This document shows positions 4,941-56,300 of a stretch of 64,000 nucleotides of DNA, piece by piece (within the stretch, counting starts at the first letter, position 1; each line of letters starts with the position of its first letter). The DNA comes from Mytilus californianus (taxonomy: Eukaryota), in NCBI RefSeq assembly GCF_021869535.1, contig NW_026262701.1, positions 35,340,001 to 35,404,000 on the forward strand, in the 5' to 3' direction. The position numbers were made by a program, and so were the translations under genes. Below the pieces are notes generated by a model that worked only from the letters and a program-made list of their open reading frames with translations, did no database searches and was not told the DNA's origin.

Positions 4941-4942
4941 TA

Positions 4943-9965: not shown

Positions 9966-10717
9966 TAATAAAAGAGTAACACAGTGGGTATCAGTAGTGG
10001 AGCAAGAACTGTTAAGCTTCCAGAATACTGAGTTTCTCTTTGACTTATGGTTTATTTTCTGTGTAGTGCTTTGTAAACTACTATTTGTTGTTTGATTTTG
10101 TTCTCTTTTGCCATGGAGTCGTTTGCTATTCTTTGACGTATGTTTGTTTGCTCATTAGTATCTCATCCTTATTATTTTTATTATCAAAAATATAATGTCG
10201 TTGTATTCATAAAGTTACTTAGTGGTTTATTATAAAGAGGGCGCCCCCGTAATATTAGTCTATTTTATGATTGAGTAATAAACATTTTTAATGGTATAAA
10301 CCCAGATTTCTCAAACTCAAATCAAGGTGTACGAAAACGTCTTTTTTTTTTCTTAAACCATTTAAAGATAAAATCGCCTTTTACCTCAGTTACTTTTTCT
10401 TCTTTTTATGCTTTCAGGATATACATTAAACAATTAAATACAACTAAAATCTTTCTACTTAAAGGGCAAATTTTCAACCTTAAATATCAAAAAATACATT
10501 GAATACTACGTCTACACATCACATTCCTTGTATGAAAACACACTAAATTACATAAAAAAAAACAATTGAATACATCAGGACCTGGTCAGATTTATATGAA
10601 ATGCTGTAACTATCAACTACATAATGGAGAAACATGTACAATCAGCAATTATTATTATCACATAACACAAAAGTTAATTTGATGAATGCTGGTATCTAAA
10701 AATTGAAAAATACTTAC

Positions 10718-11017
10718 TACTTGCGACAGCCATGATAATCCGAGTGCTCGATCCCGTTCCCAAGATGTTTGTTGAATAACAGTAGTATGACCCGGTGTCA
10801 CTTAACTGGGTATTTGAAATGGTAAGACTAGGATTGCTAACTGAAGATCCACTGTATTTTCCTCCATTTATTGCTATAGTTTCTGTATTGCCTTCTATAA
10901 CCTTCTGCCAATAGACTGAATTATGGGTTGGGTCAGCAGTGACTTCGCAGGCTAGAGTTATAGAGCTGTCAACATTGACAATGTACGCAGATGTTGGTAC
11001 AGTGACAATTGGTATAA
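10718..11017 (-). CDS. Ig exon A1 (intact, 300 bp)
   Basis: IPIVTVPTSAYIV...LACEV...YWQKV...DTGSYYC; cag acceptor, gtaagt donor. Confidence 0.9.
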
Positions 11018-20000: not shown

Positions 20001-23000
20001 AGTCAAATGCACCATTATTCTTAAATTTGGTTCTAGTTTTAAGTCAAAGCCAAAATAATTTAACAGTCAGAACATATTTTGCTGTTTTTGTAATTAATGA
20101 CATTCTGCACATATAGAAAAACCAAAATTCATCAAATAAAGAAAATGCACAGCCTTTCTGTAATAATGATTTGAGAGATATGTATTGAATACAAGAGTAA
20201 TCGTTGTTTTTACATTATAATCTCTTTAAACATAACCCCCTGATTCCACTAAAAACATATTCAGCATAAAATTAAAGTCTTTTGTTCAGGTTGTACTGCT
20301 TTTCAGCTTTCCAGGGGTTAATTCTAAAATGAAATATCTAATTATTACGATATCAATTTTACCTGATCAGGTAAACAGTTTATTGAAGGATGTTCTATTT
20401 AAGAAAAGGTAAACCTTTGTACAATGAGACTTTCACAACAGAAAGCTGTTTTAAGTTCTCTTAAACTCATGAGTGTATAACATTTTTGTGTACCTTATAA
20501 TGAATAAAATGTCCTAAACTAAGTAGCTGTTTTAGCTGATCAGGTGAAACTATCTCAGTTTTATCTACTTAAAGTATAGTAACTTTTCCTCTAAACAGAG
20601 AGTTACATTTTTTAAACCTTAAGGCTCATCAAATATTCTTCTATCACACTTTCAGTTTTCTGTAAACTAAATAAAGCTATGATTTTTTTTGCAAACTAAA
20701 CCTACAACGTAATTCAATAAAAAGTTTGAAAAAATTCTTAAACAAAATGTTCAACAAGTGTAAATATACAGATCATTACATAATGTTTATCATGTTTATA
20801 GGGCTGCAAGGTTGAATACATGTCGTTCTTGTCCATATTTCAGTTAGTTCACAACTTAAACCAATGGTTATAACCTCTTCCATTTTAACATAGAATGTCT
20901 CCTATTTGAAAATGTCTTTTATTCCACAAAGGAAAAAAAAAACAAGGCTTCATCTTGTTTTTCACCTTACTATAAAGAATTAACAATTTTTCATATGTTA
21001 TAGAAAATTTACCAAGTGTAAAAAAAGTTAAAAACATGTATTCTGAATTCTTCTGCAAAAAAAGGTAAATAGGAAACAATCTAGTAAATATGGAATTACC
21101 AAAACCACATCTTAGAAAAGGTGTTAAAAACTGTAGCTGATCATGAAATTTACACCCTGCTATTAACATTGAACGTGGTGAAAGCAAAACACAGTTAAAA
21201 AACCGTGACTTAGTAGCTAGCTTTTGACTTACTGTTGACCACATTTAATAAAGTTTGTGCACTCTCCCCAGTACCGACACTATTTGAGGCATAACACTTA
21301 TAGTCTCCAATGTCTCCGGCTACTGTGTTAGTGATTGTTAGTGGGTTAGATACAGATGATCCCGTGCATCTATTGCTTGATGGTAGGTATGTAAATACGC
21401 CATTCACATTCCTTCTCCAGTACACGATTGTGTGGGCGGGATTGACTGTAATGGTACAGATCAAGGTGATTGTTTGACCGATAGTAACACTCACTTCCTG
21501 GAACTATGATTTCCTAGACATTTCTGAGTCCCAAACAAGTTCTTATAAAGGTATAAAATTACTGCTCCTAACCGTTAGAGTAACTTTGTTCCTACAACAC
21601 TATGAGTTTCGAGTTTCGAGACCTCTCTGAGTCCCTGAACAATTCTTACGGATCCATTTACTTACTGCCAACAATAGTTAGAATAACTTACTTCCAGCAA
21701 CAGTAAGAGATCCTGGATTACTCTGACCAGTTCCAACAGAGTTGGCAGCAAAACAGACATAATCAGCAGCATCACTTGTATCAGCTCCGATTATATGAAG
21801 AGATGGTGTTGCCACGGTTCCTCCTGCATATTTGCTTGTGTTTGTCATGTCAATAGTTATCGTTTGTCCTCCCGACATTTTCTGCCAATATACAGATGTG
21901 TGCGATGGATTAGCTGAGACAATACATCCAATGGTCACATTATTTCCGTTGTTGACAGCTATGTCATTGTGGGTCAAGCTGACACTTGGGGTGTCTAAAA
22001 TTTAATTAATAAACATTTGATATAGGACATTAGATTCCCACACGAGATACTGTTCCTTAAAAGCCTTTAATAGTTCAAAGGGAAACTAACACACATTTTA
22101 ATGACTTATATGTCTATGTTTATCAAACAAGAAAATATTTGTTTACTGAACAAAATTTTATTAAAAACATATAAACAATCATAAATATCTACTAACAGTA
22201 TTATAACGAAATTCTTTCAATTGAATTTTTGATCATAATTTTTTGTTTATAATTCGATAGGTATCAATGATTTTAACAATATGTGCGTTTCTTTACTTTT
22301 CGATATAATCAATGCATTTTCAAAAGAGTGGATATTCAAACTTATAAGTTGAAAAACAAAAACACGACAAAAAAACTAAAACCATAACACAAAACACAAA
22401 ACAGAATATAGAAAACTCAGAATTGAGCAACACGAAACCTATCAAAAACCATTTTTAAATACAGTAATTTATCAATTCAGGTTTACAAAAGTTATTTGAT
22501 TTCTATGCCGAGCCAGTAATAACTTGTCATGGTTTAATTTTAAACAAAATGATAAAAAAATTAAAAAATTATTTTTAGGTAAAGATAACAATTAGGTAGA
22601 TATCATCAGTTTATTCTATAATTGATTAAACTACTGGTAACTGTTGTACTTTTGGATAAATTGTCATTTTTGATATAAAAATACTTTGTGTGTGCATAAC
22701 TTTCAAAATTTGAAAACAGTTGCCTACTAATTCCGAAATTGTAACTCAAATTCCAGATGAAAATTTTTCTTTTTTTCTTTTCTCTTTTCTACATAAAGAA
22801 AACATGGCATTTCAATTCAAGTTTTGTTCTTTTTAAGCTTTTAGTTAATACAGTAAAATAATTGAACACAAATTCAATCTTGTATTTAGTTTTCTATGTA
22901 ATGTTTTGTATACTGTTGTTTGTCTTTTGGTCGATTTTCGTGTTATGCCGTGGCATTCTCAGTGTGTGTTTGAATGTCCGTATGGTATCTTTCGCCTCAG

Positions 23001-25551
23001 AACATTTCATCTACACTACAGTACATTCCATCTATAAAGGGACGCTAACTTACATAAAAAAGCAAGTGAATTCATCAGGATCTGATCGGGTCTATAAATA
23101 TGTTAAACTATCAACTACTTAATGGAGATACATGTACAATCAGCAATTATTATTACCAGATAAAACACAATTTAATTGGATGAATGCTAGAACCTGAAAA
23201 ATGACAAATACTCACTACCAGCGACAGCTAGGACAACTGGGGTACTCGATCCTGTTTCCACGATGTTTGTTGCATAGCAGAAGTATGTTCCTGCATCACT
23301 GCGTTGAACATCTGAAATGGTAAGACTAGGATCGCTCACTGATGATCCACTGTATTTTCCTCCATTAATAGTTATAGTTTCTGTATTGCCTCCCGTTACC
23401 TTTTGCCAATAGATTAAATTATGAGTTGGGTCAGCAGTAACTTGGCAATCTAGAGTGATAGAGCTGTCAACATCGACAATGTATGCAGATGTTGGTACAA
23501 TGACAATTGGTTTATCTGAAACAGTAATAAACATAAAATTTAAAAGGACAATTTATACAAGAATTCAAATATGAAAACTTTTATGAATGAATAATTGATT
23601 CATAAAAACAATGTGTTGATGAATAAATAAATTCTTGTGGTCAGAAACAAATTGTATGAATACATAAAAAGGATAACAGCAATCTACAAAAATATTGGAC
23701 AATATATCAACCCACACCAATCAATAACACCTGACTATTGTAATCTTTCAAATGCATTATGAAAATTCTACGTTTTGCAGAGCATGTTTATTACAATACT
23801 ACATCACGCTCTGACTACAATAAAACAATATACAATAAATTAGTACAGAATGCTTATAAAAGTAATAGCGGTTGTGCATTTTCCACCTTTTTTACATATA
23901 ATAATTCGGCTTTATCTAATTATAAACGCAAAATATATGTAATAAACAGAAGATTTTCTTGTTTCAAAGCAGCAATCCAAATCACACACAAAACACACCA
24001 CTCAAAACAGATCTAAGCATGCTACGCACAGCACTATGTAGTAAATAAAATCCAGAAAGGGAACTTATTAGTTTACTTAACATAATATTATTTGAAACAC
24101 ATAAAACAATTATATAACAAAATGCATTCAATTCAGTCTTGATCATTCATTTATGTTTATAGATCAATAGATATAAATGATTTTAACAATGTCCGTTTAC
24201 TTACTTTTTCATTTAGTCAATCTATTTTCAAATTTATAAACTACTGAGAGTGCTATATGTTGTGGTATGAGCATTTTAATGTTGAATAAATTGTAATATA
24301 CATACATTTTAAAATATTTCACACAATTGCATCATAAATTCAGAATTTTACATCAAATTCAAAGTGTCTGAAAGTTTCTAATTTTTTTAAACCATCTAAA
24401 AAGGACATGGCTTTTCATTCTTATTTATTTTCATCTTTTCAAATAGTACACAAACAAATCAAATGAATGATATTAGAATCTTTGTGCTTCAGGTGCAACT
24501 TTTCAACCTAAAATATATCAAATACTATTATATCTAAAGTATGTTCCATCTATAAAGGCACACTTACACATAAAAAAAAACCAAATGAAGCCATCAATAC
24601 CTGGTCGGGTCTACTTGCAATATGGTAAACTATCATCTACATAATGCAGATGCGTATAGAATCAGCATTATTATTATTATTATTATTATTATTATCATGT
24701 AAAAACTCGTTCTATAGATTAATGCTAGTACCTGCAAATTGAAAATTACTCACTACCAATGACAGCTACGAAAATCTGAGTACTCGATGATGTTCCCAAG
24801 ATGTTTGTTGAATAACAGTAGCATGTTCCGGTATCACTAAACTAAACATTAGAAATGGTGAGACTAGGATTGGTCACTGATGATAGCCTGTATTTTCCTC
24901 CATTTATCTGTATATTTTCTGTATTGCCTCCTGTATCCTTCTGCCAAAATGCTGAATTAAGAGCTTGGTTCTGCAGTGAGTTGATAAGCCAGAGTTATAC
25001 AGGATTATTTTTGAAAATTAATGAAAAATTCTTATCTTTAAAATAAAGTACCAATAATTCATTGAATTATGTTTTTTAGTAATTTTAATCATTTCAGTGA
25101 ACAATGATCTCTTCTTAGTAAGGATCATTAGTTGTATTGAGCTATAATTTTAGATTAAAATCTAAATCTAGAATATACTTTCTAGTACGTTCTATGATGA
25201 GAGGTCAGAAATTATATCTATAAAAGCGTTATAACTTGTTATATACTTCCAACTACGACTAGATTGATACTTGAACTTATTCCTAAACCTTCATTGTTTG
25301 TAATTTTATTTTTGTAATTTCCTTCGTCACTCTATTATATATAATAAGTGGTGGTGGATTAACTGTAGAACCATATTTATTATAATTGGTGGTAAATCCA
25401 ATCTCCTAGACAGTGTTTCCATTAGTTTCCATTAGTTCTCTTCAATCTAACCATGGTTGCAGTAGGATTTGCGGTATATGAACACTGTAGTGTGATGTCT
25501 AATCCTTTGTAGGTAGAATATTGTTCTGGTTTTCTGTTACAGTTGGTATAC
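10718..25551 (-). CDS. Multi-Ig (I-set-like) protein gene, internal exon array; 5' and 3' ends not identified
   Basis: Twelve one-domain exons with C...W...D.G.Y.C motif, intact ones 300-306 bp with AG/GT borders, all phase 1-1. Confidence 0.85.
11155..11198 (+). ncRNA. Minimal type I hammerhead ribozyme motif (core mutated CTCATGA)
   Basis: Stem I GCGTTC/GGACGC, palindromic stem III AAGCGCTT, GAAA; core G to C change. Confidence 0.6.
11508..11551 (+). ncRNA. Minimal type I hammerhead ribozyme motif (core CTGATGA intact, cleavage triplet altered)
   Basis: Same fold as 11155-11198, 353 nt downstream. Confidence 0.65.
11744..12046 (-). CDS. Ig exon B1 (intact, 303 bp)
   Basis: TPNVSLTQNAINV...IGCVV...YWQKI...DAANYVC; tag acceptor, gtaagt donor. 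Confidence 0.9.
12511..12620. repeat. 38-bp tandem repeat x3
   Basis: ATGTCTTGGTTTGTTCAT recurs at 12521, 12559, 12597 separated by (TA)n. Confidence 0.85.
15093..15170. repeat. 26-bp tandem repeat x3
   Basis: GAAAATATTTATTTTCTGAACATACT three times; single copy in the paralogous intron near 22133. Confidence 0.9.
15999..16298 (-). CDS. Ig exon A2 (intact, 300 bp)
   Basis: Paralog of A1; cag acceptor, gtgagt donor. Confidence 0.9.
16475..16777 (-). CDS. Ig exon B2 (intact, 303 bp)
   Basis: Paralog of B1; cag acceptor, gtaagt donor. Confidence 0.9.
16865..17035 (+). mobile_element. Decayed single copy of the retrozyme-like repeat
   Basis: Aligns by eye to 11410-11580; hammerhead relic GAGCGTTC-TTGATGA...GAAAAGCTCTTCGGACGC. 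Confidence 0.65.
17042..17415 (-). mobile_element. Abundant interspersed repeat (3' end of a second Penelope-like family)
   Basis: AAGAAGATGTGGTATGATTGCCAATGAGACAAC... also at about 14580, 26315, 37315, 45650, 50395, 53540, 55545; at 37315-38232 it is continuous with a PLE-like ORF end. Confidence 0.75.
17445..17699. repeat. 21-bp minisatellite, about 12 copies
   Basis: Unit CATTCCATCTACACTACAGTA; explains the spurious IPSTLHY-repeat ORF. Confidence 0.9.
17876..18162 (-). pseudogene. Ig exon A3, acceptor lost
   Basis: Body open and A-like, but first codons and acceptor replaced by unrelated sequence at about 18163; donor weakened to gtgggg. Confidence 0.7.
18614..18829. mobile_element. MITE with degenerate approx. 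38-bp TIRs
   Basis: ATTCATTTTTATTCGTGGGATACCAATTTT vs AAAATTGGTATCCAGGAAAATAAATGAAT; absent from the paralogous intron next to exon C2. Confidence 0.65.
18848..19153 (-). CDS. Ig exon C1 (intact, 306 bp)
   Basis: IPTVTVDQSSY...LQCSY...VRWER...DEGNYKC; tag acceptor, gtaagt donor. Confidence 0.9.
19619..19921 (-). CDS. Ig exon D1 (intact, 303 bp)
   Basis: APVVNVASNSY...LQCTV...VKWQR...DEGRYVC; tag acceptor, gtacgt donor. Confidence 0.9.
21233..21498 (-). pseudogene. Ig exon E1, 5'-truncated and degenerate
   Basis: VSVTIGQTITLIC...VYWRR...DIGDYKC; donor gtaagt intact, no in-frame acceptor, one codon deleted (SNPLTI). Confidence 0.7.
21692..21994 (-). CDS. Ig exon B3 (intact, 303 bp)
   Basis: Paralog of B1/B2; AG/GT borders. 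Confidence 0.9.
23216..23515 (-). CDS. Ig exon A4 (intact, 300 bp)
   Basis: Paralog of A1/A2; cag acceptor, gtgagt donor. Confidence 0.9.
24754..25000 (-). pseudogene. Ig exon A5, truncated and frameshifted
   Basis: A-like nucleotide sequence, first Cys codon changed to TAT, indels, 5' part missing. Confidence 0.75.
25247..25551 (-). pseudogene. Ig exon C2, frameshifted
   Basis: C1-like sequence with indels and a short duplication (TTTCCATTAG x2). Confidence 0.75.
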
Positions 25552-38232: not shown

Positions 38233-38874
38233 ATGCTTTATTGAGCATTGAAACAACTTAAGCTAATAGGCGTATGATATCCATATGGAGTACAATCCAC
38301 GTGCCGGGGAACTAGACACGTAATTGTGATAGAAACGTGTACTCACATGAAGTGTTTTAGTACGTTTTAATGCTTTTTAAACATTTTTTCTTTGTAACAT
38401 AGTAGTTGTTACCTTTTATAGTCCACTATACGGTATGGATTTCCTCATTATTGAAGGCGACTGCTTTGTTATCTACCGTATCGAGTGCATGTTGAGTAAA
38501 ACAATATTTTCGAAAATGCATTTGAGAGATTTTTGTATACTTACCTGTATTTCTTCCATCCAAAATACGCAATAAAAACAATCACGATCAAGGCAATAAC
38601 TAACCCAGCGACTACACCAGCTACAGATTGATTTCCTAGAAAGTAAATTGATTATGTTTTGACTTGGTGTTGCAACCCAAAGCTTAATTTGAATAATTAA
38701 ATAATTTTTAAACAGACATTTTGCAGTCACAGTACTTGTATATTATGTAATTCATGCTTTATTGAGCATTGAAACAACTTAAGGTAATAGGCGTATGATA
38801 TCCATATGGAGTACAATTCACGTGCCGTGGAACTAGACACGTAATTGTGATAGAAACGTGTACTCACATGAAGT
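38233..38874. repeat. 121-bp direct repeat pair (38233-38353, 38754-38874) flanking the TM exon
   Basis: Three mismatches by eye, offset 521 bp. Confidence 0.9.
38545..38635 (-). CDS. Transmembrane exon NQSVAGVVAGLVIALIVIVFIAYFGWKKY
   Basis: tag acceptor, gtaagt donor, hydrophobic helix followed by basic stop-transfer residues. Confidence 0.85.
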
Positions 38875-40291
38875 TTTTCTGAAAAAAGTAAAATAACAAA
38901 AATACCAAACTCCTAGGAAAATTCAAAACGGAAAGTCCTTTAAGAACTGGCAAAATCAAAAGCTCAAACATATGGAAACCAACTGTCACATTCCATATTT
39001 GGAACAGGCATTTCCTTATATAGAAAATGGTGTATAAAACCTGGTTTTATAGCTAGTTAAACTTCTCACTTGTATGACAGACATAAAAGGTATACATGTC
39101 AAAAATTGATAGACATCATCTTTTGTCAAATGAATTTTCGATGGAAAGAAAATTATATATAAACTCAATAAAAAAACTTATTTGAAATATTAAACAAACA
39201 CAACTTATCAATGTGTTACATATATGTATATAGTTACAGTATTTGGCCAATTTTCATGTTGTCATATACGAAAATCATATTAAAGGATCTATATATAATT
39301 ACTTGTTTATTGTTTTTCGTTTAAATTGGTTACAATTTGTCAATGATGATTATATCATAGAACACTGATATGAACAAAAGGAAATTTGGAATATACTTCA
39401 TTCAAATAGCAACCCAACAGCTGCACCTAGAGGTCAATAATTCATCTTCAGCATAAGCCAATTGTCTATACTTTATGTCAGCCCTTAATTGACCCCATTC
39501 GATAGAAAATAAGAATAAATTGAACAGGTACATCAAAGATCTGCAATCAACACCAAAATCCCCAAAAAGCAAAACTATATCCTTTAATGTTTCAATCAAG
39601 ATATGACTAAATTCAGTCTAATGATTAAAGAAAATAAAACTGGAGCTTTTTCTGGATTTACGTTCACCAGGAAACCTCCAACTAAAACCTTTGAAAGCCA
39701 AGGGTGAATAAATATTTTAGTACTTGAGGAGCTATATGACTAATAAGGACCGGCATATATAGCCGATCTATCTATCGTCAACTTTGTACGAGGTTAAACT
39801 AGACATCTCAACAATAAGTGCTCCCCTTTTTCCTTGATCATTGGACTAACTAAAGATACTGAGCAACTAGCCAAAGAAAAAGATTGTTTTTTTTTATATT
39901 TCAGCTAACTCTACGAAAAAGACTATTGTTTAAACTTATACAAGAGTCTTATTACCGTTATCAAGAAACGATCTGTACGTTTTTCGAAATAATTGTACAA
40001 GCAAGCATATGTATATACTAAATAATATACAGACCGTATGAAATAGTTTTGAATGGGTCATTTGCTAATTATATATAACAAATTTAAAGATAGAATACCA
40101 GCTTTAAACATCAAAATATCATCTACTAGTTTATTTTTGTGTGGTTTTATAAAGCAAACTTATCTAAGCAAGACATTTCTACTAGTTTTATACAGCAAGA
40201 AACGTTTCATATGTTTGAAAAAAAAGATGCACAGATTTATGTAGACTTAACAGAAGATACGCTTTTTATCAAATTATGTGGAAAGATTTAC

Positions 40292-40333
40292 CTGAGGACT
40301 CAGTCACTGGAGTATCTGTAACAGTGTCGTACA
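40292..40333 (-). CDS. Juxtamembrane stalk exon (V)YDTVTDTPVTESS(G)
   Basis: 42 bp, phase 1-1, tttttttag acceptor, gtaaat donor, Thr/Ser-rich. Confidence 0.75.
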
Positions 40334-40869
40334 CTAAAAAAAGCATTTGAAATTTAATTTCCATAAACAATTAAAACATTATTTTCCTTTTGACACAATT
40401 TAAGCCAACAAAGCTGTTTTAGTTAGAGTGCTATATTCATTTGATGATAAAGGTATATCACTAAATTTACATAAAATCTTCGCTAAATGAATATGTTAAT
40501 ACACATAATAATGATTGAATTAAAAATATTTGTCTTCATGCTATTATTTATCTTTTGGTCGTATGAATGTTGACGTGAGAGGGTATTTATGTATCTCGCA
40601 TTCATGTTTTTGACATCGGGCGTTCCTGGTGCAGGTGGGTCATGACTTCTCCTTTTTGACTCTTGTTTTCTTCTTTATATCTAGTTGTGGTGTCTTTCTT
40701 GTTTTTAAGTCTGTTTGTCCATTTTCTTTTTTGTCATGGTGTTGTTCATTTTTCTTTGACGTATTATATTTGATTGTCCCTTTAATATTTTGTCTCTCTC
40801 TTTATTTCTTACATTCAAGAGTGAAATGAGGTGTTCTGGAACTGGAACCATGAAATGGACACATATAAC

Positions 40870-41626
40870 TCATCGAACCTTTTAACAAACTCATTAGTAA
40901 AGGTTATTTTATAAATGTTGTAATAATATCTTTGAATATTGTTAACATTGGCACAAATATCAATTTTGTCATCAACAAATTAAAACATAACTAAATTTGT
41001 ATTCTTTTCAAATGTTTTTTTTTTCGGATGTATAAATACACATCCACGTTCATTTTCTATATAGAGATTACATAAAATCATACACATTTATTATAAGGTG
41101 AAATCCTAACCATACTACTGCCAGTCGATACTTTAATTTTGGCATTGCACAAGTCATGTCATTAAAAGACTTAATCGCTGGGATGTGTTTTAGTTGATTT
41201 TAGTCTCTGATGCATGGGTTTTTATTATTAATTGTTTTGGCTTTTAACTAGCTTTCAGGAATTGCGAGTACTCTCAAATCCTACTTTCCTGTTAATTTGA
41301 TCTGTTGACACAATTTGTAATGCATGTTTGTTATTCAATGTTTACTTATTTTGTGTCTCACCTTTGAGTATTTACCTTAAGTATTTAGTATCACGATAAA
41401 TTTTTAATTCTGTTCTCGTACTATGAACAACAAATTATTTTTTTTTGTAAAATGATATTTCCGTACTCCATGTACTCCTTACTACAAAATTATTATATTT
41501 AGCTGTGTACGTTATTTTATTTTATATTTTGTCCAAGGTTATAGTTGTCTTTCTAATATTGTTTTACATCTTCTCCCCCTTTATTTTATTAATATTGTAT
41601 TTTTATTCGGCATAGATCAAATTTAT
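40870..41626 (+). repeat. Inverted duplication arm A (757 bp; old PLE 3' fragment)
   Basis: Reverse complement of 42942-43698; same length, no difference found by eye including homopolymer lengths. Confidence 0.95.
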
Positions 41627-42482
41627 TCAAGTGCATGTTTACTTGTTTTTGTTAATATGTGTTTTTGATTGAGTTAAGCCATTTCAAATGATATTTCATA
41701 GTTTGTCTTTCTATATTGTAATGTTACACCTCTACTTTAAGTTAGGGTGAAGGTTTGCGCCTGTTAAAAAGTTTAAACCCGCATCATTTGTTTGCACCTG
41801 TCCTAAGTCAGGAACCTGTTGTTCAGTGGTTGTCGTTTGTTGATGTGGTTCATAAGTGTTTCTCGTTTCTAGTTTTTTTTATATAGATAAGACCGTTGGT
41901 TTTCCTGTCTAAATTATCAAATAAATGTGTCGTTATTCAACAGTTATGTAGAAGGTTATATAAAAAGAGAGATATGAAATAGTCTACACAAATGACAGTA
42001 ACATTTAACGAACATTAATAATGATCTAGCCACAAAATCAATGTTGAAGTCAATTCTACTGTTTCAAGATTTCAAGATAGTTCCTTCTTTATTAGAAACT
42101 ACTATAGATATCCAGTTTATACCACTTCCGAAATCAAGATATGTGAGACAAAATGTACTTTTAAATTATCAAAATGCCCATGGAAATGATGTTAAAAACT
42201 GGAAGATTTGTTTAACTGTAGATTAATAAATAACACATAACATCGTTAACACGAATACATGGAATCGTTTACCCCAATGAAAAAGTTGTCTCATCTGAAG
42301 TTAGGTTCAAAGAACCGTCCATAGTTTGCAATGAAAAGGTAAATCACTTTCTTCTTTTTTGATTAGTGTAAAACAATACCTGAGAAACGGGCCATAATTA
42401 CTATTTTGGGTGATATGAAAAAGTATAATGATAATTTCTTGGAAATCTTTCAATGGTTACAATGAAAAGCGTTATAAAAAAG

Positions 42483-42923
42483 TTAATAAAACGCAACCAA
42501 CAAAGAACATATTTATTTACAACTGAAGCCACCAATGAGCATGCAATAAGCTACAGTTAGGACCAGCAGATGATCATCATAACAAAACTAATTTGATGTG
42601 GTATTAGAACAATTTCTATGTACGTAACTACAATACCCTTTCCTTTTTCCCAAATGTGACCTACCGAATTAGACTTATTACAGGGTTTGTACTAACATGA
42701 GCAACACGACGGATGCCACATGTGGAGCAGGATCTGCTTACCCTTCTGGAGCACCTGAGATCACCTCTAGTTTTTGGTGGGGTTTGGGTCACTCAGTCTT
42801 TAGTTTTCTATGTTGTGTTTTGTGTACTGTTGTTTGTCTGTTGGTCTTTTTTTCTTTTTTTGCCATGGCGTTGTCAGTTTATTTTCGACTTATGACTTTG
42901 ATTGTCCCTCTGGTATCTTTTAT
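42483..42923 (+). repeat. Inverted duplication arm B (441 bp; intron DNA plus Naiad 3' end)
   Basis: Reverse complement of 43976-44416. Confidence 0.95.
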
Positions 42924-42941
42924 AATACATAGTACTAATAT

Positions 42942-43698
42942 ATAAATTTGATCTATGCCGAATAAAAATACAATATTAATAAAATAAAGGGGGAGAAGAT
43001 GTAAAACAATATTAGAAAGACAACTATAACCTTGGACAAAATATAAAATAAAATAACGTACACAGCTAAATATAATAATTTTGTAGTAAGGAGTACATGG
43101 AGTACGGAAATATCATTTTACAAAAAAAAATAATTTGTTGTTCATAGTACGAGAACAGAATTAAAAATTTATCGTGATACTAAATACTTAAGGTAAATAC
43201 TCAAAGGTGAGACACAAAATAAGTAAACATTGAATAACAAACATGCATTACAAATTGTGTCAACAGATCAAATTAACAGGAAAGTAGGATTTGAGAGTAC
43301 TCGCAATTCCTGAAAGCTAGTTAAAAGCCAAAACAATTAATAATAAAAACCCATGCATCAGAGACTAAAATCAACTAAAACACATCCCAGCGATTAAGTC
43401 TTTTAATGACATGACTTGTGCAATGCCAAAATTAAAGTATCGACTGGCAGTAGTATGGTTAGGATTTCACCTTATAATAAATGTGTATGATTTTATGTAA
43501 TCTCTATATAGAAAATGAACGTGGATGTGTATTTATACATCCGAAAAAAAAAACATTTGAAAAGAATACAAATTTAGTTATGTTTTAATTTGTTGATGAC
43601 AAAATTGATATTTGTGCCAATGTTAACAATATTCAAAGATATTATTACAACATTTATAAAATAACCTTTACTAATGAGTTTGTTAAAAGGTTCGATGA
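42942..43698 (-). repeat. Inverted duplication arm A'
   Basis: Reverse complement of 40870-41626. Confidence 0.95.
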
Positions 43699-43788
43699 TA
43701 TACTATCCAGACAATTATAATTTCGATTGAGGGGTATTAAATCATTACAATGAACATTATTTAATTTAAATTTGTGAAATAATTGTAG

Positions 43789-43944
43789 ACGAATGTCCTT
43801 TTGGTACATATTGGATCAACGGAGTTTGTGTTATGTGTCCTAAAGGAACTTACCAAGACGAAAGTGGACAAGTAAACTGTAAAATATGTCCTGATGGTTT
43901 AACGACACAGTACATCGCTTCTAAAAATGAAAGTGAATGCGCAG
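43789..43944 (+). CDS. GCC2/GCC3 (ephrin-receptor-like Cys-rich) exon, inverted relative to its host gene
   Basis: 156 bp, tag/gttagt borders, (D)ECPFGTYWINGVCVMCPKGTYQDESGQVNCKICPDGLTTQYIASKNESECA; missed by the ORF track. Confidence 0.9.
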
Positions 43945-43975
43945 GTTAGTAGAAACAATGTCTTGAAAAAGAGAG

Positions 43976-44416
43976 ATAAAAGATACCAGAGGGACAATCA
44001 AAGTCATAAGTCGAAAATAAACTGACAACGCCATGGCAAAAAAAGAAAAAAAGACCAACAGACAAACAACAGTACACAAAACACAACATAGAAAACTAAA
44101 GACTGAGTGACCCAAACCCCACCAAAAACTAGAGGTGATCTCAGGTGCTCCAGAAGGGTAAGCAGATCCTGCTCCACATGTGGCATCCGTCGTGTTGCTC
44201 ATGTTAGTACAAACCCTGTAATAAGTCTAATTCGGTAGGTCACATTTGGGAAAAAGGAAAGGGTATTGTAGTTACGTACATAGAAATTGTTCTAATACCA
44301 CATCAAATTAGTTTTGTTATGATGATCATCTGCTGGTCCTAACTGTAGCTTATTGCATGCTCATTGGTGGCTTCAGTTGTAAATAAATATGTTCTTTGTT
44401 GGTTGCGTTTTATTAA
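43976..44416 (-). repeat. Inverted duplication arm B'
   Basis: Reverse complement of 42483-42923. Confidence 0.95.
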
Positions 44417-44933
44417 TACAATATACAATAGTATATCAAATATATACCGAACAACAACATTAAAATATAGTACCACTAATATTTTTGAAAAAGTAAAAGT
44501 ATTCTGTACATTTTTACACAATCTTCTTGTCAACACGGACATTTGCTTCTCTCAATTTATAGAATTTCAAAACTTCAAATTTTTCATTTTCATGAAACAA
44601 ATCAGTTTTTAGAATATTCAGAAACTTAAAGTTAGTAAAGAGAAATGGACGAAAATTCAGTTGTATCTGTTTTGTCGCTGCCTTCCTTTCAAAACACTTT
44701 GTGAAAAATGCTGGATCTTAAACCTGATTTCAAACATTTTATTGGCAAACACATCCTTTAGTTTAAAAAAAATGGTTCTTCTATAGCATTAGATTAGTTA
44801 TCAGGAAACCCTTGAATTAAAATTGATTATACAAAATTGCATACGAGTAGAAAACTTGGTCTGGAAAAACGTGGCATGAAAACTACCAGAACAACGTTAT
44901 ATGATTTACAGTTAAAAGATTTTTTTTTCATAC

Positions 44934-45122
44934 CACAAATTAACTCTTGTTCGACTGTTCCTTCTGGACATGTAATGTCGATTTTTATTATAAGTGAAGA
45001 CAAGTCAGCAGAATAAATAGTGCCTTTGTCTTCTATTATCAGGACATCCGTGGTATTCAGTTGATGAAGTGACATGGTTAAATCCGTGTATGCTGTAACA
45101 ACTTCCAATAATCCCGAAGAAA
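44934..45122 (-). CDS. Linker exon ending ITCPEGTVEQELIC
   Basis: 189 bp, phase 1-1; homologous position to plus exon ending IKCPENSIPVYCNTISC. Confidence 0.85.
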
Positions 45123-46175
45123 CTTAAAATAGGACATATTTATTCTATAAGCATGTAATTGACATTCAGTTAAGCAGTAATGTTTGTCATTATAATCCAG
45201 TCAAAACACGAATGCACAATCAAAAGCGAGCCTTCATTCACCTCTCAACAACAGTGCAAAGTTTGTTATAACTTGACTAGAACAGGTACATGACCTAGAA
45301 TAAAATGCCTTTTATAAATCTGACGATCAGAAAATTTTCAAAACTGTACGTTATCTTTCTTTCATCTACTTTCAAACTTATGAGTTTGAAAGTCCCTTGG
45401 TATCTTTCGCCTCTCTTTTTCGCCAATTTCTACAATTATATGTACTTGAAGAAAATCTTTCCAAGCATACGTAAGTTATGAAACACGTGTACAACATATG
45501 AAAAATTTACTCAAATCTTGCAGTTGAAGTCCGATAAATATGCGAAGACAAACCAGGAATTTTATAATATAAAAGGTAGCTTCATATAATCAATTCCAAC
45601 AAAAGTATATAGTTTTGAATGCAAAAGTTGTTTTTCCGTCAATAGGGAACCTGTTTAATAGCCGACCATACGGTATGGGTTTTCTCATTGTTGAAGGCCG
45701 TACGGTTGCCTATAATTGTTTACATCCACTTCATTTGAACCTTGGTGGATAGTTGTTTCATTGGCAATCATAACACAACTCCTTATTTCTATGATGAGTA
45801 CTAAGTTTCAAGTAAATGCTAATTCAACTTCAATGTCAACTACCCTAAACTTTATTTTAATCTAAGATTTATAATTACTTTTACAAAACACTTTTACCAT
45901 ATGAATATGTAAATGATTCCGTAATGAGGATTCTGAGCAAAGGTATCATATTAAAGGGAGGTGTTGATATGCAATATCTTAGATGTCTGCTGTTTAACTT
46001 TTTTAAATGAAAGATGTGTTTTTACCTATATAATTGTATACATTTTCAACGATTTATTTCCCAGTGTAACACAGATGCATTGGTATTACATTGGTATCCG
46101 GTAACATGTTATCAATTGTGAATAAACGAGTCATACGCACACTAACAAAAAAAGAAGAAAAAAAAATAAACAAAC

Positions 46176-46452
46176 CTATATTGTTAGAATAAAACTCTTC
46201 CAAAATTAATGGGTGTTCTGACAGTTCAGAATAAATTTGTATAACAATTTGAACAGATGTTACAGTTGATTGCTTTCGTCTACTTTCACATCCAAACGTA
46301 GACGTGCTGACCGTACATGTATTATTCTCCACACATTGAAGGTTCTTTAAATTCTGATTCAGTGTATCAGATACGCTTTCTTCATTACTACAATCCACCT
46401 CATTTGTATGTTACAGCTGCAGTTGCCCTCACTGCTCTAGGTGAATCTGAAC
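46176..46452 (-). pseudogene. SEA-like exon with +1 frameshift
   Basis: 277 bp (3n+1) between phase-1 neighbours; RSDSPRAVRATAAVTY then frame change at TACAAATGAG to NEVDCSNEES...CESRRKQ. Confidence 0.75.
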
Positions 46453-47314: not shown

Positions 47315-47506
47315 GAGCACATGGAGGTGGAATAGCATTCCAAATATGTCCAGTTTGAGGTCCACATTCGTATTGATCAAGTGGTTGATAGTCTCTTACA
47401 AAGCTATACCCATCTTGACACGTGACCACACATGAAGTAGAATCAGATATGCTCGTACAGTTAAATCTGTTTTTGTAAGAGTATATAGTGGAATGACTTA
47501 GACAAA
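47315..47506 (-). CDS. Sushi/CCP-like exon
   Basis: 192 bp, FNC...SCVVTCQDGYSF...YECGPQTGHIWNAIPPPCA. Confidence 0.85.
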
Positions 47507-47799: not shown

Positions 47800-48890
47800 A
47801 ATATCCATTTGACGTGGTTCGGTACTTATACATCCCGTCATTGTGTTATTGTGCTAAGGTAAATTTTTGTATTATTGTCTTTCGTTTTTGATATGTGCTT
47901 TGTCTATATGCCTTTTTTTTTTCTTTGTTGACATATTTGTTTGTTTTTATAGAGATTAAGATCATAACACAATGTTAACTGCTGTATCCCTATTTTTGCC
48001 TTCTTTATATATTATGTCTGTTTGTTTTGTTCACACATCGTTGTCAATATAAGGGAATTTTATGCGACTGTCATATAAGTGAGAGGTTTAGCTAGCTATA
48101 TAACTAGGTTTAATCGACCATTTTCTACATAAGAAAATGCCTGTACCAAGTCAGGAATATAACAGTTGTTATCCATTCGTTTGATGTGTTTGAGCTTTTG
48201 ATTTTGCCATTTGATTAGGGACTTTCCGTTTTGAATTTTCCTCGGAGTTCGGTATTTTTTTATATTTTACTTTATTCATCCACGTTAAATGAACTCTTTT
48301 TGACAGTTGTATCAATGATAATCATATCCCTTTATTTTCATATTGTTAATCCACACCGGATGCATATTATTAATCTCCCAATTGATACGATATTCCCGGG
48401 CTTGTATTTCCTATCATGATTTCCTTGATAGGGGATTGCTGCTCACAAGGAAGCTATTAAACCAAGAGTTTCAAATGGTGAAGTTGAAATCATCCCTTTG
48501 TAAATTTTACGGACGCCATCACGAGTTGGTTGACCGTTATGGAATAACCGTTTCACAGATGATATCGGATATGTTCCCTATGTCGTAACTACTATACCCT
48601 TCCCTTTTCACGAATGTGACCTACCGAATTAGACTACTTACCGGATTTGTAATAACATAAGCAACACGACGGGTGCCACATGTGGAGCAGGATCTGCTTA
48701 CCCTTCCGGAGCACCTGAGATCACCCCAAGTTTTTGGTGGGGTTCGTGTTGCTTAGTCTTTAGTTTTCTACGTTGTGTTATCTGTACTATTATTTGTCTG
48801 TTTGTCTTTTTATTTTTAGCCATGGCGTTGTCAGTTTGTTTTCGATCTATGAGGAGTTTGACTGTCCCTCTGGTATCTTTCGTCCCTCTT
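47800..48890 (+). mobile_element. Adjacent PLE 3' fragments (family 3 UTR 47800-48275; Naiad thumb plus UTR 48330-48890)
   Basis: ISQLIRYSRACISYHDFLDRGLLLTRKLLNQ and family terminus GGTATCTTTCGTCCCTCTT. Confidence 0.85.
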
Positions 48891-49007
48891 TTATTAACAT
48901 AGTATTAACTAGTCGAATTTAATAGAATGATTTCGATTATAATGTAGATTGATATTTTTTAAAGTAATGGATTGCTATACAAATGATTAATATATATATA
49001 TGATTAC

Positions 49008-49178
49008 CCGGACAAAGATCTGTATTACAAGCCTGCGATGACATGTTTGTTCCAGAGCATTCCAATCCATATAGCTCAGGTGCAGGATCATCGCAGTATC
49101 GAGCTCGGTACTGGGTTCCACCATTACAGGATTGTGAACATTCTGACCAACCTAACCACGAGCCCCATTTACCATGCA
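49008..49178 (-). CDS. TSP1 exon
   Basis: 171 bp, HGKWGSWLGWSECSQSCNGGTQYRARYC...CNTDLCP. Confidence 0.92.
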
Positions 49179-49960: not shown

Positions 49961-50194
49961 CAATTTGTGTTTCACAAAACGTTCCTGTACAATTTGAATC
50001 ACATACACAGGAATAATTGGCAAAATTGCTCACACAAGTTGCATTATTTTTACATCCATTTACTTTGCAAAAGTTTGGTGGAATGTCACAATTAGCACCA
50101 CTATACCCACTTAGACATTGGCAACTGTAACCATTCTGTTCGCTTATACAGATGTTGTCATTGCCACAAGGACTTGTCTTACATTCATTATAAA
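49961..50194 (-). CDS. Double EGF exon
   Basis: 234 bp, YNECKTSPCGNDNIC...CQCLSGYSGANCD...CVCDSNCTGTFCE; missed by the ORF track. Confidence 0.92.
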
Positions 50195-52578: not shown

Positions 52579-52764
52579 CGTCACATTTTGAAAAGGAAAG
52601 CTCTGTGTCTATCGTATCTGCCGTAAAAACATCATTCATCGTAAGCAAAGCATTGCTCATATTTGACGAACAATTTTCTGCGAGTTGGTATATCAAAGTA
52701 TCAGACAAAATACCAGTATCAGACAAAATACCATTGTCAAATACAAGCCCTGTAAAAGTCAATC
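52579..52764 (-). CDS. Last pentraxin/LamG exon
   Basis: 186 bp, (G)LTFTGLV...C...SKCD, same position and ends as plus exon GSGFSGY...C...GQCD. Confidence 0.75.
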
Positions 52765-53246
52765 CTGCAAATAAAAAAAAAACTAAAAGTGTATAATTTA
52801 ACCATTCTTTTGTCTAAAAGATTATTATTCATACCACTAGAAAAAACCTCTTGGCCAATAATTTTACTTAGATTTCGTGAGGATGGAATCGCATAGTAAC
52901 ATTAACGGAACTAATGTTACTGCATCAGATGAGCATTTTGACTATAAATGTCGCTAGGGATACTTGAGACAAAATTATTTGATAATTCAAACTTCAAATT
53001 ATCTGACTTTTTTTCTGTCTTACACTTTCAATACTAGTAGATCTAGTATTTCTCATGATAACAAAAACTTTGGGAGTTATCCGATACAATTTGAAGTTTG
53101 TTACTTCCTCACCTCACAGTTTGTAAGATTTTTAACAAGAATTATGTAATGGTTTTGTATTTCGAACTGTTCACCCAGTTTCCACACGTCCTATATTTAA
53201 CTTGTTTAAAAAATACTTAATTCGAACAAAGAAAATTTATTACCAG

Positions 53247-53347
53247 CTGCCTTCGCCTTGATTTCTAAAACTGGATTTGTTGAAAATTCAGTTTCTGCGT
53301 CTGTAGAGGTATCAAATATATGTTCGGTTTTCTTCAGTCCATTAATA
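53247..53347 (+). CDS. Probable SEA-like exon
   Basis: cag/gtaagt, phase 1 to 0, matches phase-0 start of 53878. Confidence 0.5.
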
Positions 53348-56300
53348 GTAAGTATTGATAATTGGATACAAAATAATGATTTACCACAATGATTAATAAA
53401 CTTCTGAGATTACTTTAAGATTGGTTCTTTGTGTCTTTTGTCTTTTTTATTTGTGCTTCGTGTCGATCTGCATATTGTTTTTACAAAAATCAGGCCAATG
53501 TTTTTTTTTTCATTTGAATTGGTTTACATTTTTGTCAAATATCGGGGACGTTATAGCTTACAGTACAATATAGGTTTTCATTATTGTTGAGAGCCATATG
53601 GTGACCTATAGTTGCTTTCATCCACGTAATATTGTCTCTGGTGGATAGTTGTTTCACTGGCAATTATACCACATCTCATATTTATAATTTTTTTTATTGA
53701 CAGTTTATATCCCATATTTAATCAAAGAATAAATCTGCACACTTTATCTTGTGTTCTTTTCTTCGAACTCTATGATTGATGATATTCTAGTAACACATTG
53801 AGTAACACATTGATTCTTTTTTATACAAAAGTGAAAGTATTTTTTTAAATACGCATCGAATACTAGTAATATTTCAGGTTGTTTGCGGAGATACCTCCTG
53901 TAAGCGTTCAACTGGCAACCTGAAAGTTGATGTGGAAATTTATTTTAGCATAGAAAACACAACTGTTTCGTCGATCAAATATGAAGAAGAAGTACTGACT
54001 GTAACAGAACTGATGTATGTAATTGAAAATGAGTTCTCTTCAGAGAACGTGACACTGGATAGCGGAAACCATACTACAGACTTTTTAGGAATTTCATCAA
54101 ATGGACTGGAGATTAAATGTCCCGAAAATTCCATTCCTGTGTATTGTAATACTATAAGTTGTTGTAAGTATACTGATATTTTTATTAAACTACTAATAAA
54201 ACAAATATGTAAATGACTTTTTTTACAAATAGTGATCTAGAAATTTTAAGGGGAAAAAGTAGTCTTGTACATGCAGTGCTCATATATGACCATGTAATCA
54301 CTAAAATGTTTAACTCAAAGGTAAATTGAAAAAGGGGAAGTCAATAAAAACTGACAAAACAAAGCTCTATTGTATCAAGCAAGTACGATTGAACATACAA
54401 ATTAGGTAAAGAAAAATGTATTTAATTAAGGCAACATTAGTTTACCGATGCTCAAATCTCATAAATCGTTTAAGATGATAGAAATCAATGTAACACACAG
54501 AAACCGAGGCGTCGTATAAACTCCAAATGATCGAAATCAGGTGTTTTACAGGGTAAGCGTCACCTGCTATGTATAAATCACCGCCATGCGATTCTATACT
54601 AAGTCATTCAACTTGTAGGCCCTTTAGTCTTATTTTCAATCTTCATATTTTGGTTGACCACTATGTAATATTTGTTTTGCAGTTGACGACCAAGGATCTT
54701 TTTATCTTTTCATGACATCAATAAATGCGACTTATCACCGGATTTTTACTCGTTATGAGCAACACGACGGATAACATTATTTAACCAGGAACTGCTCCAT
54801 TTTTTATTATATACTCGCTTTTACCCCCGGTTTTGTTTGTGGTAATTGTGTTTCTCATATAGTTTTCCTTGTAGTATTATTTCGGACTGTTGTTTGTTTG
54901 TTCTAGTTTTCCTTTGGTCAATGTGTTGACCCTCTTTCTTCGACATCTGGTTATTCTTTGTCACCTCCTATCTCCCTGTCCCCGTGGTGCCTTTTTCCTT
55001 TTTTCCTATGATCAAGACCATAATTTTTTAATTTAGTTAATAGAATGTTTCCATAGCTCATCAAAAAATAATGAAAAAGAAATATCTTCAATTTGTCATT
55101 CAAGTGCCTTGTCCAGCTGGATCATATTATGATAGTGTAGTGAGTGAATGCATCAGGTGCAAAAGAGGATCCTATCAGCCAAATTCTGGACAAAGAAGTT
55201 GTATTTCATGTCCCAAAAGGCTGATAACAGCTATAGAAGGGGCTATTGAATCATCAGAATGTGAAGGTAATATCTCTCAAATACTTTCTTTAATTTTATC
55301 AAATCAACTTATGATGTCGACCGTTGGTTATATCTGTAAAACAGATAATTTTATGTAAATTTTAACTCTCAAAGTAATGCCAAATTTAAATATTAAAATG
55401 AAATTAAGATTTAATCTTATGAATAGTTATTTCTTTTATATGTTTATCGGTATCATTAAATCAACATTGTTTCTTCAATTTTTAACTAAAATAATTGTCT
55501 GCAAATAAATCAAAGTTTGATATTGAAAAATAAGAATAAGGAGATGATTACCAATGAGACAACTATCCACCAAAGTTCAAATAAAGTGGATGTAAGCAAC
55601 TATATGCAACCGTACCGACTTCAACAATGAGAAAAACCCATACCGTATAGTCGTCTATAAAAGGCACCGACATGAAAAATATGAAACATTTCAATTGAGA
55701 AAAATAACGGCATAATTTATAACAAAACAATAAACGAAAAACAAATATGACTGACATGAACCAACGACAACCACTGAACTACAGGCTCCTGACTTGGGAC
55801 AGGCACATAAAGAATGTGGCGGGGTTAAACATGTTTGTGAGCGCTCAACCCTCCCCTAACTTTGAACAGTGGTGTAACAGCACAACATAAGAACAAACTA
55901 TAAAAATCAGTTGAAAAAGGCTTAACTCATCAGATCGATAAAACCCATTTCAGTAGAAATCTATAATGAAACCATGAAGTTTATGATAACAGTCACAGTT
56001 TGTATACTCGTATATTACCTTATAGCAAAACACTATCTAAATTGAATTAAATATGCAACCTATATTGTATTGAACTTTGCAGAAGCCTGTGTTCCTGGAA
56101 CATGGTCTACAACTGGATTACCACCTTGCATTGAATGTGATATCGGATATTATGAAGAAACTTATGGATCTGTGAATTGTTCAAAATGTCCCGGTAACAA
56201 AATTACCTTAATGGAAAGTAGAAGTAATGTGTCAGAATGCTTTGGTAAGAAACTCTTATTAATAGTCGAATGATACATTTGAAACATAAAGGAACACGTT

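What the first reader, a model, noticed from the sequence alone, without database searches (positions are those of the whole stretch)
43789..43944. A single exon is flipped inside its own gene
The GCC2/GCC3 exon has good splice sites on the plus strand but fits exactly, in frame, between two minus-strand exons: linker ...ELIC + G/AC = D ECPFG... and ...ESECA + G/TG = V YDTVTD... (stalk), then the TM exon. In the paralogous module a GCC exon also follows the linker. So the exon belongs to the minus gene and has been inverted. Because it is phase 1-1, skipping it leaves the frame intact (ELICVYDTV), so the inversion deletes one domain rather than the protein.
Basis: partly seen in the sequence, partly recalled or inferred. 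Interest (0 to 1): 0.85.

Follow-up and report, generated by a model that had tools for sequence, protein, structure and literature searches.

The report
Flipped exon in broken mussel gene
One domain-coding exon of a mussel cell-surface protein gene lies backwards in this assembly, while other mussels carry and express it the right way round; this gene copy is also broken elsewhere, so it is a small complex rearrangement (or an assembly error), not a clean domain deletion.

Summary
43789-43944 (+) is an open, phase 1-1, 156-nt exon encoding a full Ephrin_rec_like (GCC2/GCC3) domain (Pfam E 9.5e-15). It lies between minus-strand exons of a Mytilus SVEP1-like membrane protein gene. It belongs to that gene. 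Homologues run linker-GCC-stalk-TM. All their other exons map to the minus strand; only this one maps to plus, in its colinear place (65% identity). Spliced contigs from two conspecific studies join the linker exon (44934) directly to 43789. DNA contigs from another individual and a related species have the exon co-oriented with the linker exon, about 590 nt away. So the flipped state is derived.

It sits in a 3.5-kb complex rearrangement with two 100%-identical inverted duplications (757 and 441 nt), 18-nt and 11-nt fillers and an 8-nt inverted duplication. This is the known class of duplication-flanked inversion.

A real rare allele (about 0.6) versus an assembly artefact (about 0.3) is unresolved.

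The "only one domain is lost" reading fails for this copy. The exon two upstream has a +1 frameshift, and the copy is cut off mid-exon at about 53.35 kb. The scan noted the rearrangement itself separately (s1-302608). Interest is modest.

The parts
43789..43944 (+). Ephrin_rec_like (GCC2/GCC3) exon. It is 156 nt, phase 1-1, and lies on the strand opposite to the rest of its gene.
   Evidence: Sequence. Pfam E 9.5e-15, full length. 65% identical to the GCC domain that follows the linker in P0001. Spliced contigs X17 rec19 and X10 rec4 start it at 43788/43789 directly after 44934/44935.
44934..45122 (-). Linker exon, 189 nt, phase 1-1, ending ...EQELIC + G.
   Evidence: Contig pieces cover 44934-45124. 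91% identical to M. galloprovincialis P0019 and 63% to P0001.
40292..40333 (-). Stalk exon, 42 nt, phase 1-1 (V)YDTVTDTPVTESS.
   Evidence: Sequence. X17 depth in the bin 40200-40366 equals about 45 nt of the spliced contig rec19; this is an inference.
38545..38635 (-). Transmembrane exon (G)NQSVAGVVAGLVIALIVIVFIAYFGWKKY.
   Evidence: Hydropathy scan and sequence with splice sites.
40870..41626 (.). Arm A of the 757-nt perfect inverted duplication. This is the ancestral copy; it is made of high-copy repeats.
   Evidence: X2 contig rec23 spans the L|A border at 40869/40870.
42942..43698 (.). Arm A', the inverted 100%-identical copy of A, inserted between B and the flipped segment.
42483..42923 (.). 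Arm B of the 441-nt perfect inverted duplication. It is in the ancestral position. Its transposable element is cut about 12 nt short of the element's end.
   Evidence: X2 contig rec25 spans the U1|B border.
43976..44416 (.). Arm B', which keeps the ancestral adjacency to the exon segment. The transposable element runs on to 43967.
   Evidence: Contigs X2 rec28 and X10 rec5 span the border at 43975/43976.
43699..43975 (.). Segment C, the single-copy piece that is actually inverted. It holds the exon. Its first 8 nt (43699-43706) are the reverse complement of 44428-44435.
42924..42941 (.). 18-nt filler at the B/A' junction. No template for it was found in the window.
44417..44427 (.). 11-nt filler at the B'/R junction. 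It is absent from the ancestral contig of X2, which goes from 43707 straight to 44428.
46176..46452 (-). Exon two upstream of the flipped exon. It is 277 nt, not a multiple of 3. An extra A in the run 46403-46405 puts TGA (46402-46400) in frame.
   Evidence: tblastn frame jump against P0019, sequence, and intact reading in P0019 and P0020.
47315..47506 (-). Sushi-like exon of the same gene (no Pfam hit).
49008..49178 (-). TSP1 exon.
49961..50194 (-). Double EGF exon.
53224..53346 (-). Remnant of a pentraxin/LamG-like exon. Homology to the orthologue starts abruptly at about 53346, and no acceptor site is there.

Best explanation
The exon is the last extracellular-domain exon of a minus-strand Mytilus SVEP1-like type I membrane protein gene. 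The gene's order is ...pentraxin-like, EGF x2, TSP1, sushi-like, spacer, linker, GCC, stalk, TM. The ancestral local order, in plus-strand coordinates, was L-A-U1-B-C'-R, where C' is segment C with the exon on the minus strand. In that state the exon lay about 590 nt downstream of the linker exon.

The assembled haplotype reads L-A-U1-B-(18 nt)-A'-C-B'-(11 nt)-R. Segment C, which holds the exon, is flipped. B is duplicated in inverted orientation beside it, and an inverted copy of A from 1.3 kb away is inserted at the other junction. This is a duplication-flanked inversion with an interspersed inverted duplication. It is most simply made in one event by three template switches during replication or break repair (MMBIR/FoSTeS type); that mechanism is inferred.

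With the exon antisense, the minus-strand pre-mRNA can only splice linker to stalk, which is in frame. This is inferred, not shown. The same copy also carries a +1 frameshift two exons upstream and is 5'-truncated. It is therefore best read as a decaying, probably non-functional allele or copy. Other individuals carry and express the intact arrangement.

Confidence that the exon belongs to the minus gene and that the flipped state is derived is about 0.97. The 0.6 given for this explanation as a whole is the confidence that the flipped state is real DNA rather than an assembly error.
For: (1) Homologue colinearity. P0001 maps exon by exon to the minus strand from 53343 to 44935 at 51-67% identity. 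Its next segment maps to 43776-43940 on the plus strand at 65% (E 8e-20). P0004 and P0018 behave the same way. All three proteins read linker, GCC, stalk, TM.

(2) Spliced contigs. X17 rec19 (2497 nt) and X10 rec4 (1400 nt), from two studies of the same species, join 44934/44935 (minus) directly to 43788/43789 (plus sense). The tool reports this as an 'opposite strands' joint.

(3) DNA contigs. X2 rec27 (same species, a different study) reads the reverse complement of 45200..44428 followed directly by 43707..43902. X14 rec13 (related species, about 90-93% identical) does the same at 44431/43704. This gives both polarity and an outgroup.

(4) X2 contigs span L|A, U1|B and C|B', the adjacencies expected to be ancestral.

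(5) The arms are 100% identical over 757 and 441 nt, and they are the only such pairs in the 64 kb. There is a 3-nt TGA microhomology at A'|C, two short fillers and an 8-nt inverted duplication.

(6) The B'|R junction joins two single-copy sequences (depth table). Repeat-driven misassembly therefore cannot explain it.

(7) The structure returns to the correct flank in the correct orientation, which chimeric reads rarely do (inference).
Against: None of the three derived junctions (42923-42942, 43698/43699, 44416-44428) was seen in any of the four laid runs. Perfect arm identity is equally expected from an artefact. No carrier RNA was examined, so the linker-to-stalk skip is unobserved. The frameshift and the truncation could also be assembly faults, which would raise the odds of an artefact. 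Only Logan contigs were laid, and these show presence, not absence.
Confidence: 0.6

Rival explanations
1. Assembly artefact. The individual carries the ordinary co-oriented exon, and the 3.5-kb structure was created by a chimeric or template-switched read, or by gap filling, and then polished to perfect identity.
For: No derived junction appeared in four laid runs. The arms are exactly 100% identical. The same gene copy shows a 1-nt indel and an abrupt mid-exon break, which could mean a locally poor assembly. The scan's first readers noted other small inversions with inverted duplications in this genome. Those notes are unchecked.
Against: There are three breakpoints with 18-nt and 11-nt fillers and an 8-nt inverted duplication, and the structure returns to the correct flank. 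This is not the simple palindrome that foldback or missed-adapter chimeras produce (inference). One junction joins two single-copy sequences. The extra A sits in a run of only 3, which is not a typical homopolymer error.
Confidence: 0.3
2. The DNA is real, but it is not an allele. The window holds a 5'-truncated duplicate (pseudogene copy) of an intact gene located elsewhere. The contigs and transcripts of the other animals come from that intact paralogue.
For: The copy starts in mid-exon at about 53346 and lacks residues 1-121 of P0019. It has a frameshift. It lies back to back with another paralogue.
Against: X2 contigs match introns and transposable-element insertions at about 98.5-99% with single-copy depth. 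Among the pieces shown, no second, rearranged set of contigs appears. X17 is identical over the exon (0 differences in 154 nt). Most contig pieces were not listed, so this rival is not excluded.
Confidence: 0.15
3. The exon is in its proper orientation and belongs to a plus-strand gene, for example the paralogue that starts at 53.8 kb or a nested gene.
For: It has good plus-strand splice sites. Plus-strand GCC exons lie at 55.1 and 56.1 kb.
Against: It is only 35-40% identical to those exons, against 64-65% to the GCC domain that follows the linker in homologues. Spliced contigs join it to the minus-strand linker exon. No plus-strand coding exons were found upstream of it.
Confidence: 0.02
4. 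The exon is flipped in all animals and reaches the mRNA by trans-splicing of an antisense transcript.
For: Only the 'opposite strands' RNA joint, taken in isolation.
Against: DNA contigs of X2 and X14 show the co-oriented genomic arrangement, which explains the joint without trans-splicing.
Confidence: 0.01

Closest known systems
Duplication-flanked inversions (dupINV / dupINVdup complex structural variants) described in human genomes (PMC5338099 and its ref. 4; PMC6286558). Their proposed origin is replication-based template switching (MMBIR, PMC2621351).
   Same: There is an inverted segment with inverted duplication(s) at its edge, three breakpoint junctions within a few kb, short fillers and minimal microhomology. 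The copies are perfectly identical.
   Different: This one is much smaller (a 277-nt inverted core). It has an extra inverted copy of a segment from 1.3 kb away (A') inserted at one junction. It occurs in a mussel. It has not been validated by reads of the carrier.
Mytilus SVEP1-like mosaic membrane proteins: M. coruscus CAC5384615.1, M. californianus XP_052093571.1 and XP_052093592.1, M. galloprovincialis VDI64019.1/VDI64020.1.
   Same: The exon and domain order is the same from the pentraxin-like region to the TM segment. Per-exon identity is 77-94% to the M. galloprovincialis models and 51-67% to the M. coruscus-type protein.
   Different: In the window the GCC exon is on the other strand, one exon is frameshifted, and the N-terminal HYR/Sushi/GCC part is missing. 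Both annotated M. galloprovincialis models stop by reading through the linker exon's donor site.
Gene presence/absence and hemizygous structural variation in Mytilus galloprovincialis (PMC7653742, PMC10514466).
   Same: A gene is intact and expressed in some individuals and disrupted in one haplotype.
   Different: The disruption here is an intragenic micro-inversion plus other lesions, not absence of the whole gene. It is not shown that this gene counts among the dispensable genes.

Membership tests
Ephrin_rec_like / GCC2_GCC3 domain (PF07699) | Match to the Pfam model above the gathering score over the full model length. | tested here: met
   54.6 bits against a cutoff of 23.1, E 9.5e-15, model positions 1-48 of 48.
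Mytilus SVEP1-like membrane protein gene (minus strand) | The exon occupies the colinear position between linker and stalk, and is closer to that position's domain in homologues than to other GCC domains. | tested here: met
   64-65% identical to the post-linker GCC domain of P0001, P0004 and P0018, against 35-40% to the window's other GCC exons.
Mytilus SVEP1-like membrane protein gene (minus strand) | The exon is spliced to the gene's neighbouring exons in mRNA. | tested here: met
   The linker-to-GCC joint at 44934/43789 is present in X17 rec19 and X10 rec4. The GCC-to-stalk joint is only inferred, from bin depth.
Mytilus SVEP1-like membrane protein gene (minus strand) | A complete gene with an N-terminal HYR/Sushi/GCC part and an open frame. 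| tested here: not met
   Residues 1-121 of P0019 have no match in the window. Homology starts in mid-exon at about 53346. There is a +1 frameshift in the exon 46452..46176.
Duplication-flanked inversion (dupINV class) | The segment is inverted relative to the ancestral order, with polarity set by an outgroup. | tested here: met
   X14 (related species) and X2 (a conspecific) have the exon co-oriented with the linker exon.
Duplication-flanked inversion (dupINV class) | Inverted duplication adjoining the inverted segment. | tested here: met
   B/B' is 441 nt at 100% identity, A/A' is 757 nt at 100%, and there is an 8-nt inverted duplication as well.
Duplication-flanked inversion (dupINV class) | Junction-spanning reads in the carrier genome. 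| not tested
MMBIR/FoSTeS template switching | Microhomology or short templated insertions at the junctions. | tested here: inconclusive
   There is a 3-nt TGA microhomology at A'|C. The 18-nt and 11-nt fillers have no template in the window.
In-frame exon-skipping allele | A symmetric phase, so that the linker-to-stalk join keeps the frame. | tested here: met
   All three exons are phase 1-1, and G+TG gives Val.
In-frame exon-skipping allele | The skip junction 44934 to 40333 is seen in RNA of a carrier, and the reading frame upstream is open. | tested here: not met
   No such joint appears among the listed joints, although none of the laid animals is a known carrier. The upstream frame is broken at 46403-46400.

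The most novel reading that the evidence does not exclude
The flipped state is a real allele segregating in the mussel population. The frameshift and the truncation are assembly faults, or are bypassed. Carriers would then express a membrane protein lacking exactly one Ephrin-receptor-like domain. That would make it a natural domain deletion produced by inverting a single symmetric exon in one template-switching event. The two interleaved perfect intronic inverted repeats could additionally form long double-stranded RNA in the pre-mRNA.
Probability: 0.1. Interest if true: 0.55.

Novelty: new member of a known kind. Interest (0 to 1): 0.3.

Why it matters
If the flipped state is real, this is a base-resolved invertebrate example of a duplication-flanked micro-inversion. 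Its ancestral state is fixed by both a conspecific and an outgroup. It would show how a replication-type event can disable or remodel a mosaic receptor gene one exon at a time, in a species known for extreme structural polymorphism. If it is an artefact, it flags a local assembly fault, together with a possible indel and a truncated exon, that would mislead annotation of this gene family. Either way it does not open a new kind of biology.

Tried and rejected
(1) I looked for transposable-element copies elsewhere in the window that cross the four disputed borders (L|A, U1|B, A'|C, B'|R), to set polarity from the sequence alone. None crosses a border. On sequence alone, an inversion of U1 was as parsimonious as an inversion of C. 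The contigs settled it.

(2) I searched for a template for the 18-nt filler. There is none within 3 mismatches.

(3) I tried to fetch the M. galloprovincialis locus of P0016 as an independent assembly. It is not on record.

(4) I ran protein searches for transcript-derived proteins of the same species that carry the linker/GCC/stalk junctions or a skipped form. Only P0001, P0016 and P0018 were found, and no skipped form.

(5) I looked for plus-strand partner exons upstream of 43.7 kb. Only transposable-element ORFs are there.

(6) I considered two independent insertions of one transposable element to explain A and A'. I rejected this because A is a composite of repeats with uneven copy number, has no target-site duplication, and its copy is 100% identical to a neighbour that X2 shares as an old insertion.

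(7) Pfam finds no family for the linker, spacer or sushi-like exons.

Full report
**The exon**

The plus strand at 43789-43944 reads ttgtag|AC GAA TGT ... GCA G|gttagt. It is 156 nt, phase 1-1 and open. Its 51 full codons match Pfam Ephrin_rec_like (PF07699, the GCC2/GCC3 fold) from end to end at E 9.5e-15. It is a real coding exon at exactly the stated coordinates.

**Its neighbours**

On the minus strand, the exon upstream in gene order ends ...ELIC + G|gtatga at 44934. Spliced contigs show that this linker exon starts at 45122, so it is 189 nt long. Downstream lie a 42-nt stalk exon (40333..40292) and a transmembrane exon (38635..38545). Further upstream on the minus strand are:
- a spacer exon (46452..46176);
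- a sushi-like exon (47506..47315);
- a TSP1 exon (49178..49008);
- a double EGF exon (50194..49961);
- pentraxin/LamG-like exons (52.6-53.3 kb).

A divergent paralogue (30-40% amino-acid identity) runs on the plus strand from 53.8 kb. It has the same module order, and its linker-like exon is followed by a GCC exon. Every domain exon whose borders I set is phase 1-1 apart from the frameshifted spacer exon, so frame compatibility alone proves little.

**Which gene owns the exon**

A whole-library HMMER search with the linker exon found 13 relatives. Three informative ones all read linker, GCC domain, stalk, TM:
- P0001, which clusters with M. coruscus CAC5384615.1 and is named SVEP1-like by UniRef;
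- P0004, M. californianus XP_052093571.1;
- P0018, M. californianus XP_052093592.1, which turned up in a later search.

Pfam on the full-length homologues gives HYR, Sushi, Ephrin_rec_like x3, a Laminin_G_3-type match in one homologue (P0004), EGF and TSP1. tblastn of P0001 against the window maps residues 95-536 exon by exon onto the minus strand, from 53343 down to 44935, at 51-67% identity. Residues 533-587 then map onto 43776-43940 on the plus strand at 65% (E 8e-20). P0004 and P0018 behave the same way. By contrast, the exon is only 35-40% identical to the window's other GCC exons.

**Evidence from other animals**

I laid four runs on 40200-45200.
- Two transcriptome-sized runs of the same species, from different studies, each hold a long contig that joins the linker exon directly to the GCC exon at the predicted splice sites. 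In X17 rec19 (2497 nt), record positions 812-1002 cover 45124..44934 on the minus strand and positions 1003-1156 cover 43789..43942 on the plus strand. X10 rec4 (1400 nt) does the same. The tool reports this as an 'opposite strands' joint at 43788/44935. These contigs are spliced, so the runs are RNA.
- X17's depth in the bin holding the stalk exon equals about 45 nt of that contig. This suggests the contig runs on into the stalk exon, but that is an inference.
- A DNA contig of an independent conspecific (X2 rec27, 1183 nt, about 99% identical) reads the reverse complement of 45200..44428 followed directly by 43707..43902.
- A DNA contig of a related species (X14 rec13, 1335 nt, about 90-93% identical) does the same at 44431/43704.

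In both of those genomes the exon therefore lies on the same strand as the linker exon, about 590 nt downstream of it. The flipped state in the window is derived.

**The rearrangement**

Two perfect inverted repeats surround the exon. A (40870-41626) pairs with A' (42942-43698), 757 nt. B (42483-42923) pairs with B' (43976-44416), 441 nt. They are the only inverted-repeat pairs of 150 nt or more above 90% identity in the 64 kb.

The assembled order is L, A, U1, B, 18-nt filler, A', C (43699-43975, with the exon), B', 11-nt filler, R. On sequence alone, an inversion of U1 and an inversion of C were equally parsimonious, and no transposable-element copy crosses a disputed border. The contigs decide it:
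- X2 spans L|A, U1|B and C|B', and joins C' to R.
- The ancestral order was therefore L-A-U1-B-C'-R.
- The novel junctions are B/filler/A', A'|C and B'/filler/R.

Further junction detail:
- The transposable element inside B is cut 12 nt short at 42923, while in B' it continues into C. This fits C-B' being the old adjacency.
- 43699-43706 is the reverse complement of 44428-44435, an 8-nt inverted duplication.
- A'|C shares 3 nt (TGA).
- The 18-nt filler has no template in the window.

This matches the known class of duplication-flanked inversions (PMC5338099, PMC6286558), with an extra interspersed inverted duplication. The simplest origin is three template switches in one replication or repair event (MMBIR, PMC2621351). 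That mechanism is inferred.

**Real or artefact**

None of the three derived junctions appeared in the listed pieces, joints or loose ends of the four runs. Most rows were not shown, and Logan contigs prove presence only.

Points in favour of a real variant:
- B'|R joins two single-copy sequences (depth 4-8 in X2), so repeat-driven misassembly cannot make it.
- The structure has fillers and returns to the correct flank, unlike foldback chimeras.

Points in favour of an artefact:
- The arms are perfectly identical.
- The derived junctions are absent from the listed pieces of the four runs laid here.
- The same gene copy has two other oddities (next section).

My estimate is real 0.6, artefact 0.3.

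**Other lesions in the same copy**

The spacer exon 46452..46176 is 277 nt, although both of its borders are phase 1. The run AAA at 46403-46405 has one A more than the reading N-E-V-D-C requires, and the incoming frame hits TGA at 46402-46400. M. galloprovincialis P0019 and the genomic ORF P0020 are open at this point.

Homology to the orthologue's pentraxin-like exon begins abruptly at about 53346, with no acceptor site there. Residues 1-121 of P0019 have no match anywhere in the window. P0021 shows that this exon is continuous in other DNA.

In this assembly the gene copy is therefore 5'-truncated, frameshifted and carries a flipped exon. The conclusion that only a domain is lost does not hold for this copy as assembled. 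A truncated paralogous duplicate, rather than an allele, cannot be excluded.

**Verdict**

The core interpretation, that the exon belongs to the minus gene and is inverted, is strongly supported by independent RNA and DNA. The functional inference is not supported. Whether the flipped DNA is real remains unresolved. It is a new member of a known kind of small complex structural variant, in a species known for heavy structural polymorphism (PMC7653742). Interest is modest.

Noticed in passing
window 53224-53810: The minus-strand gene copy ends in mid-exon at about 53346. Only about 460 nt further on, a plus-strand paralogue begins with an internal (linker-like) exon at 53806-54170. Neither has a first exon here. 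The plus gene's exons are in natural order and only 30-47% identical to the minus gene's, so it is not the flipped 5' half of that gene.
   Followed up: partly
window 46400-46405: There is a +1 frameshift (an extra A) with an immediate TGA in the spacer exon of the minus gene. The M. galloprovincialis proteins are open here.
   Followed up: yes
window 52700-52735: An in-frame 18-nt tandem duplication (GILSDT GILSDT) lies in the pentraxin-like exon, relative to M. galloprovincialis VDI64019.1.
   Followed up: no
P0016 / P0019 (M. galloprovincialis VDI64020.1, VDI64019.1): Both annotated models of the closest relative stop by reading through the linker exon's donor site (...LICGMNKSF). They lack the GCC, stalk and TM exons. 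The locus could not be fetched to see why.
   Followed up: partly
window 10677-25000, minus strand: An array of about ten paralogous Ig-like exons lies here, several near-identical in pairs and one degraded at about 24.9 kb.
   Followed up: no
window 3-908 and 4936-6204 (minus); 7.7-9.9 kb; 30.2-31.3 kb; 32.4-32.8 kb: Retrotransposon gag/protease/RT ORFs and RT fragments.
   Followed up: no
window 41641-41915, 42616-42920, 43967-44283, 48578-48892, 7503-7777: Two very high-copy short repeat families are present, with summed contig depth of 10^5-10^6 in both mussel species. In the related species the contig stops matching at 43969, just where the element in B' begins. That insertion may therefore be younger than the species split.
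   Followed up: no
window 40870-44416: The order A, B, A', B' is interleaved. In a pre-mRNA the two perfect duplexes (757 and 441 bp) would therefore compete with each other rather than nest.
   Followed up: no
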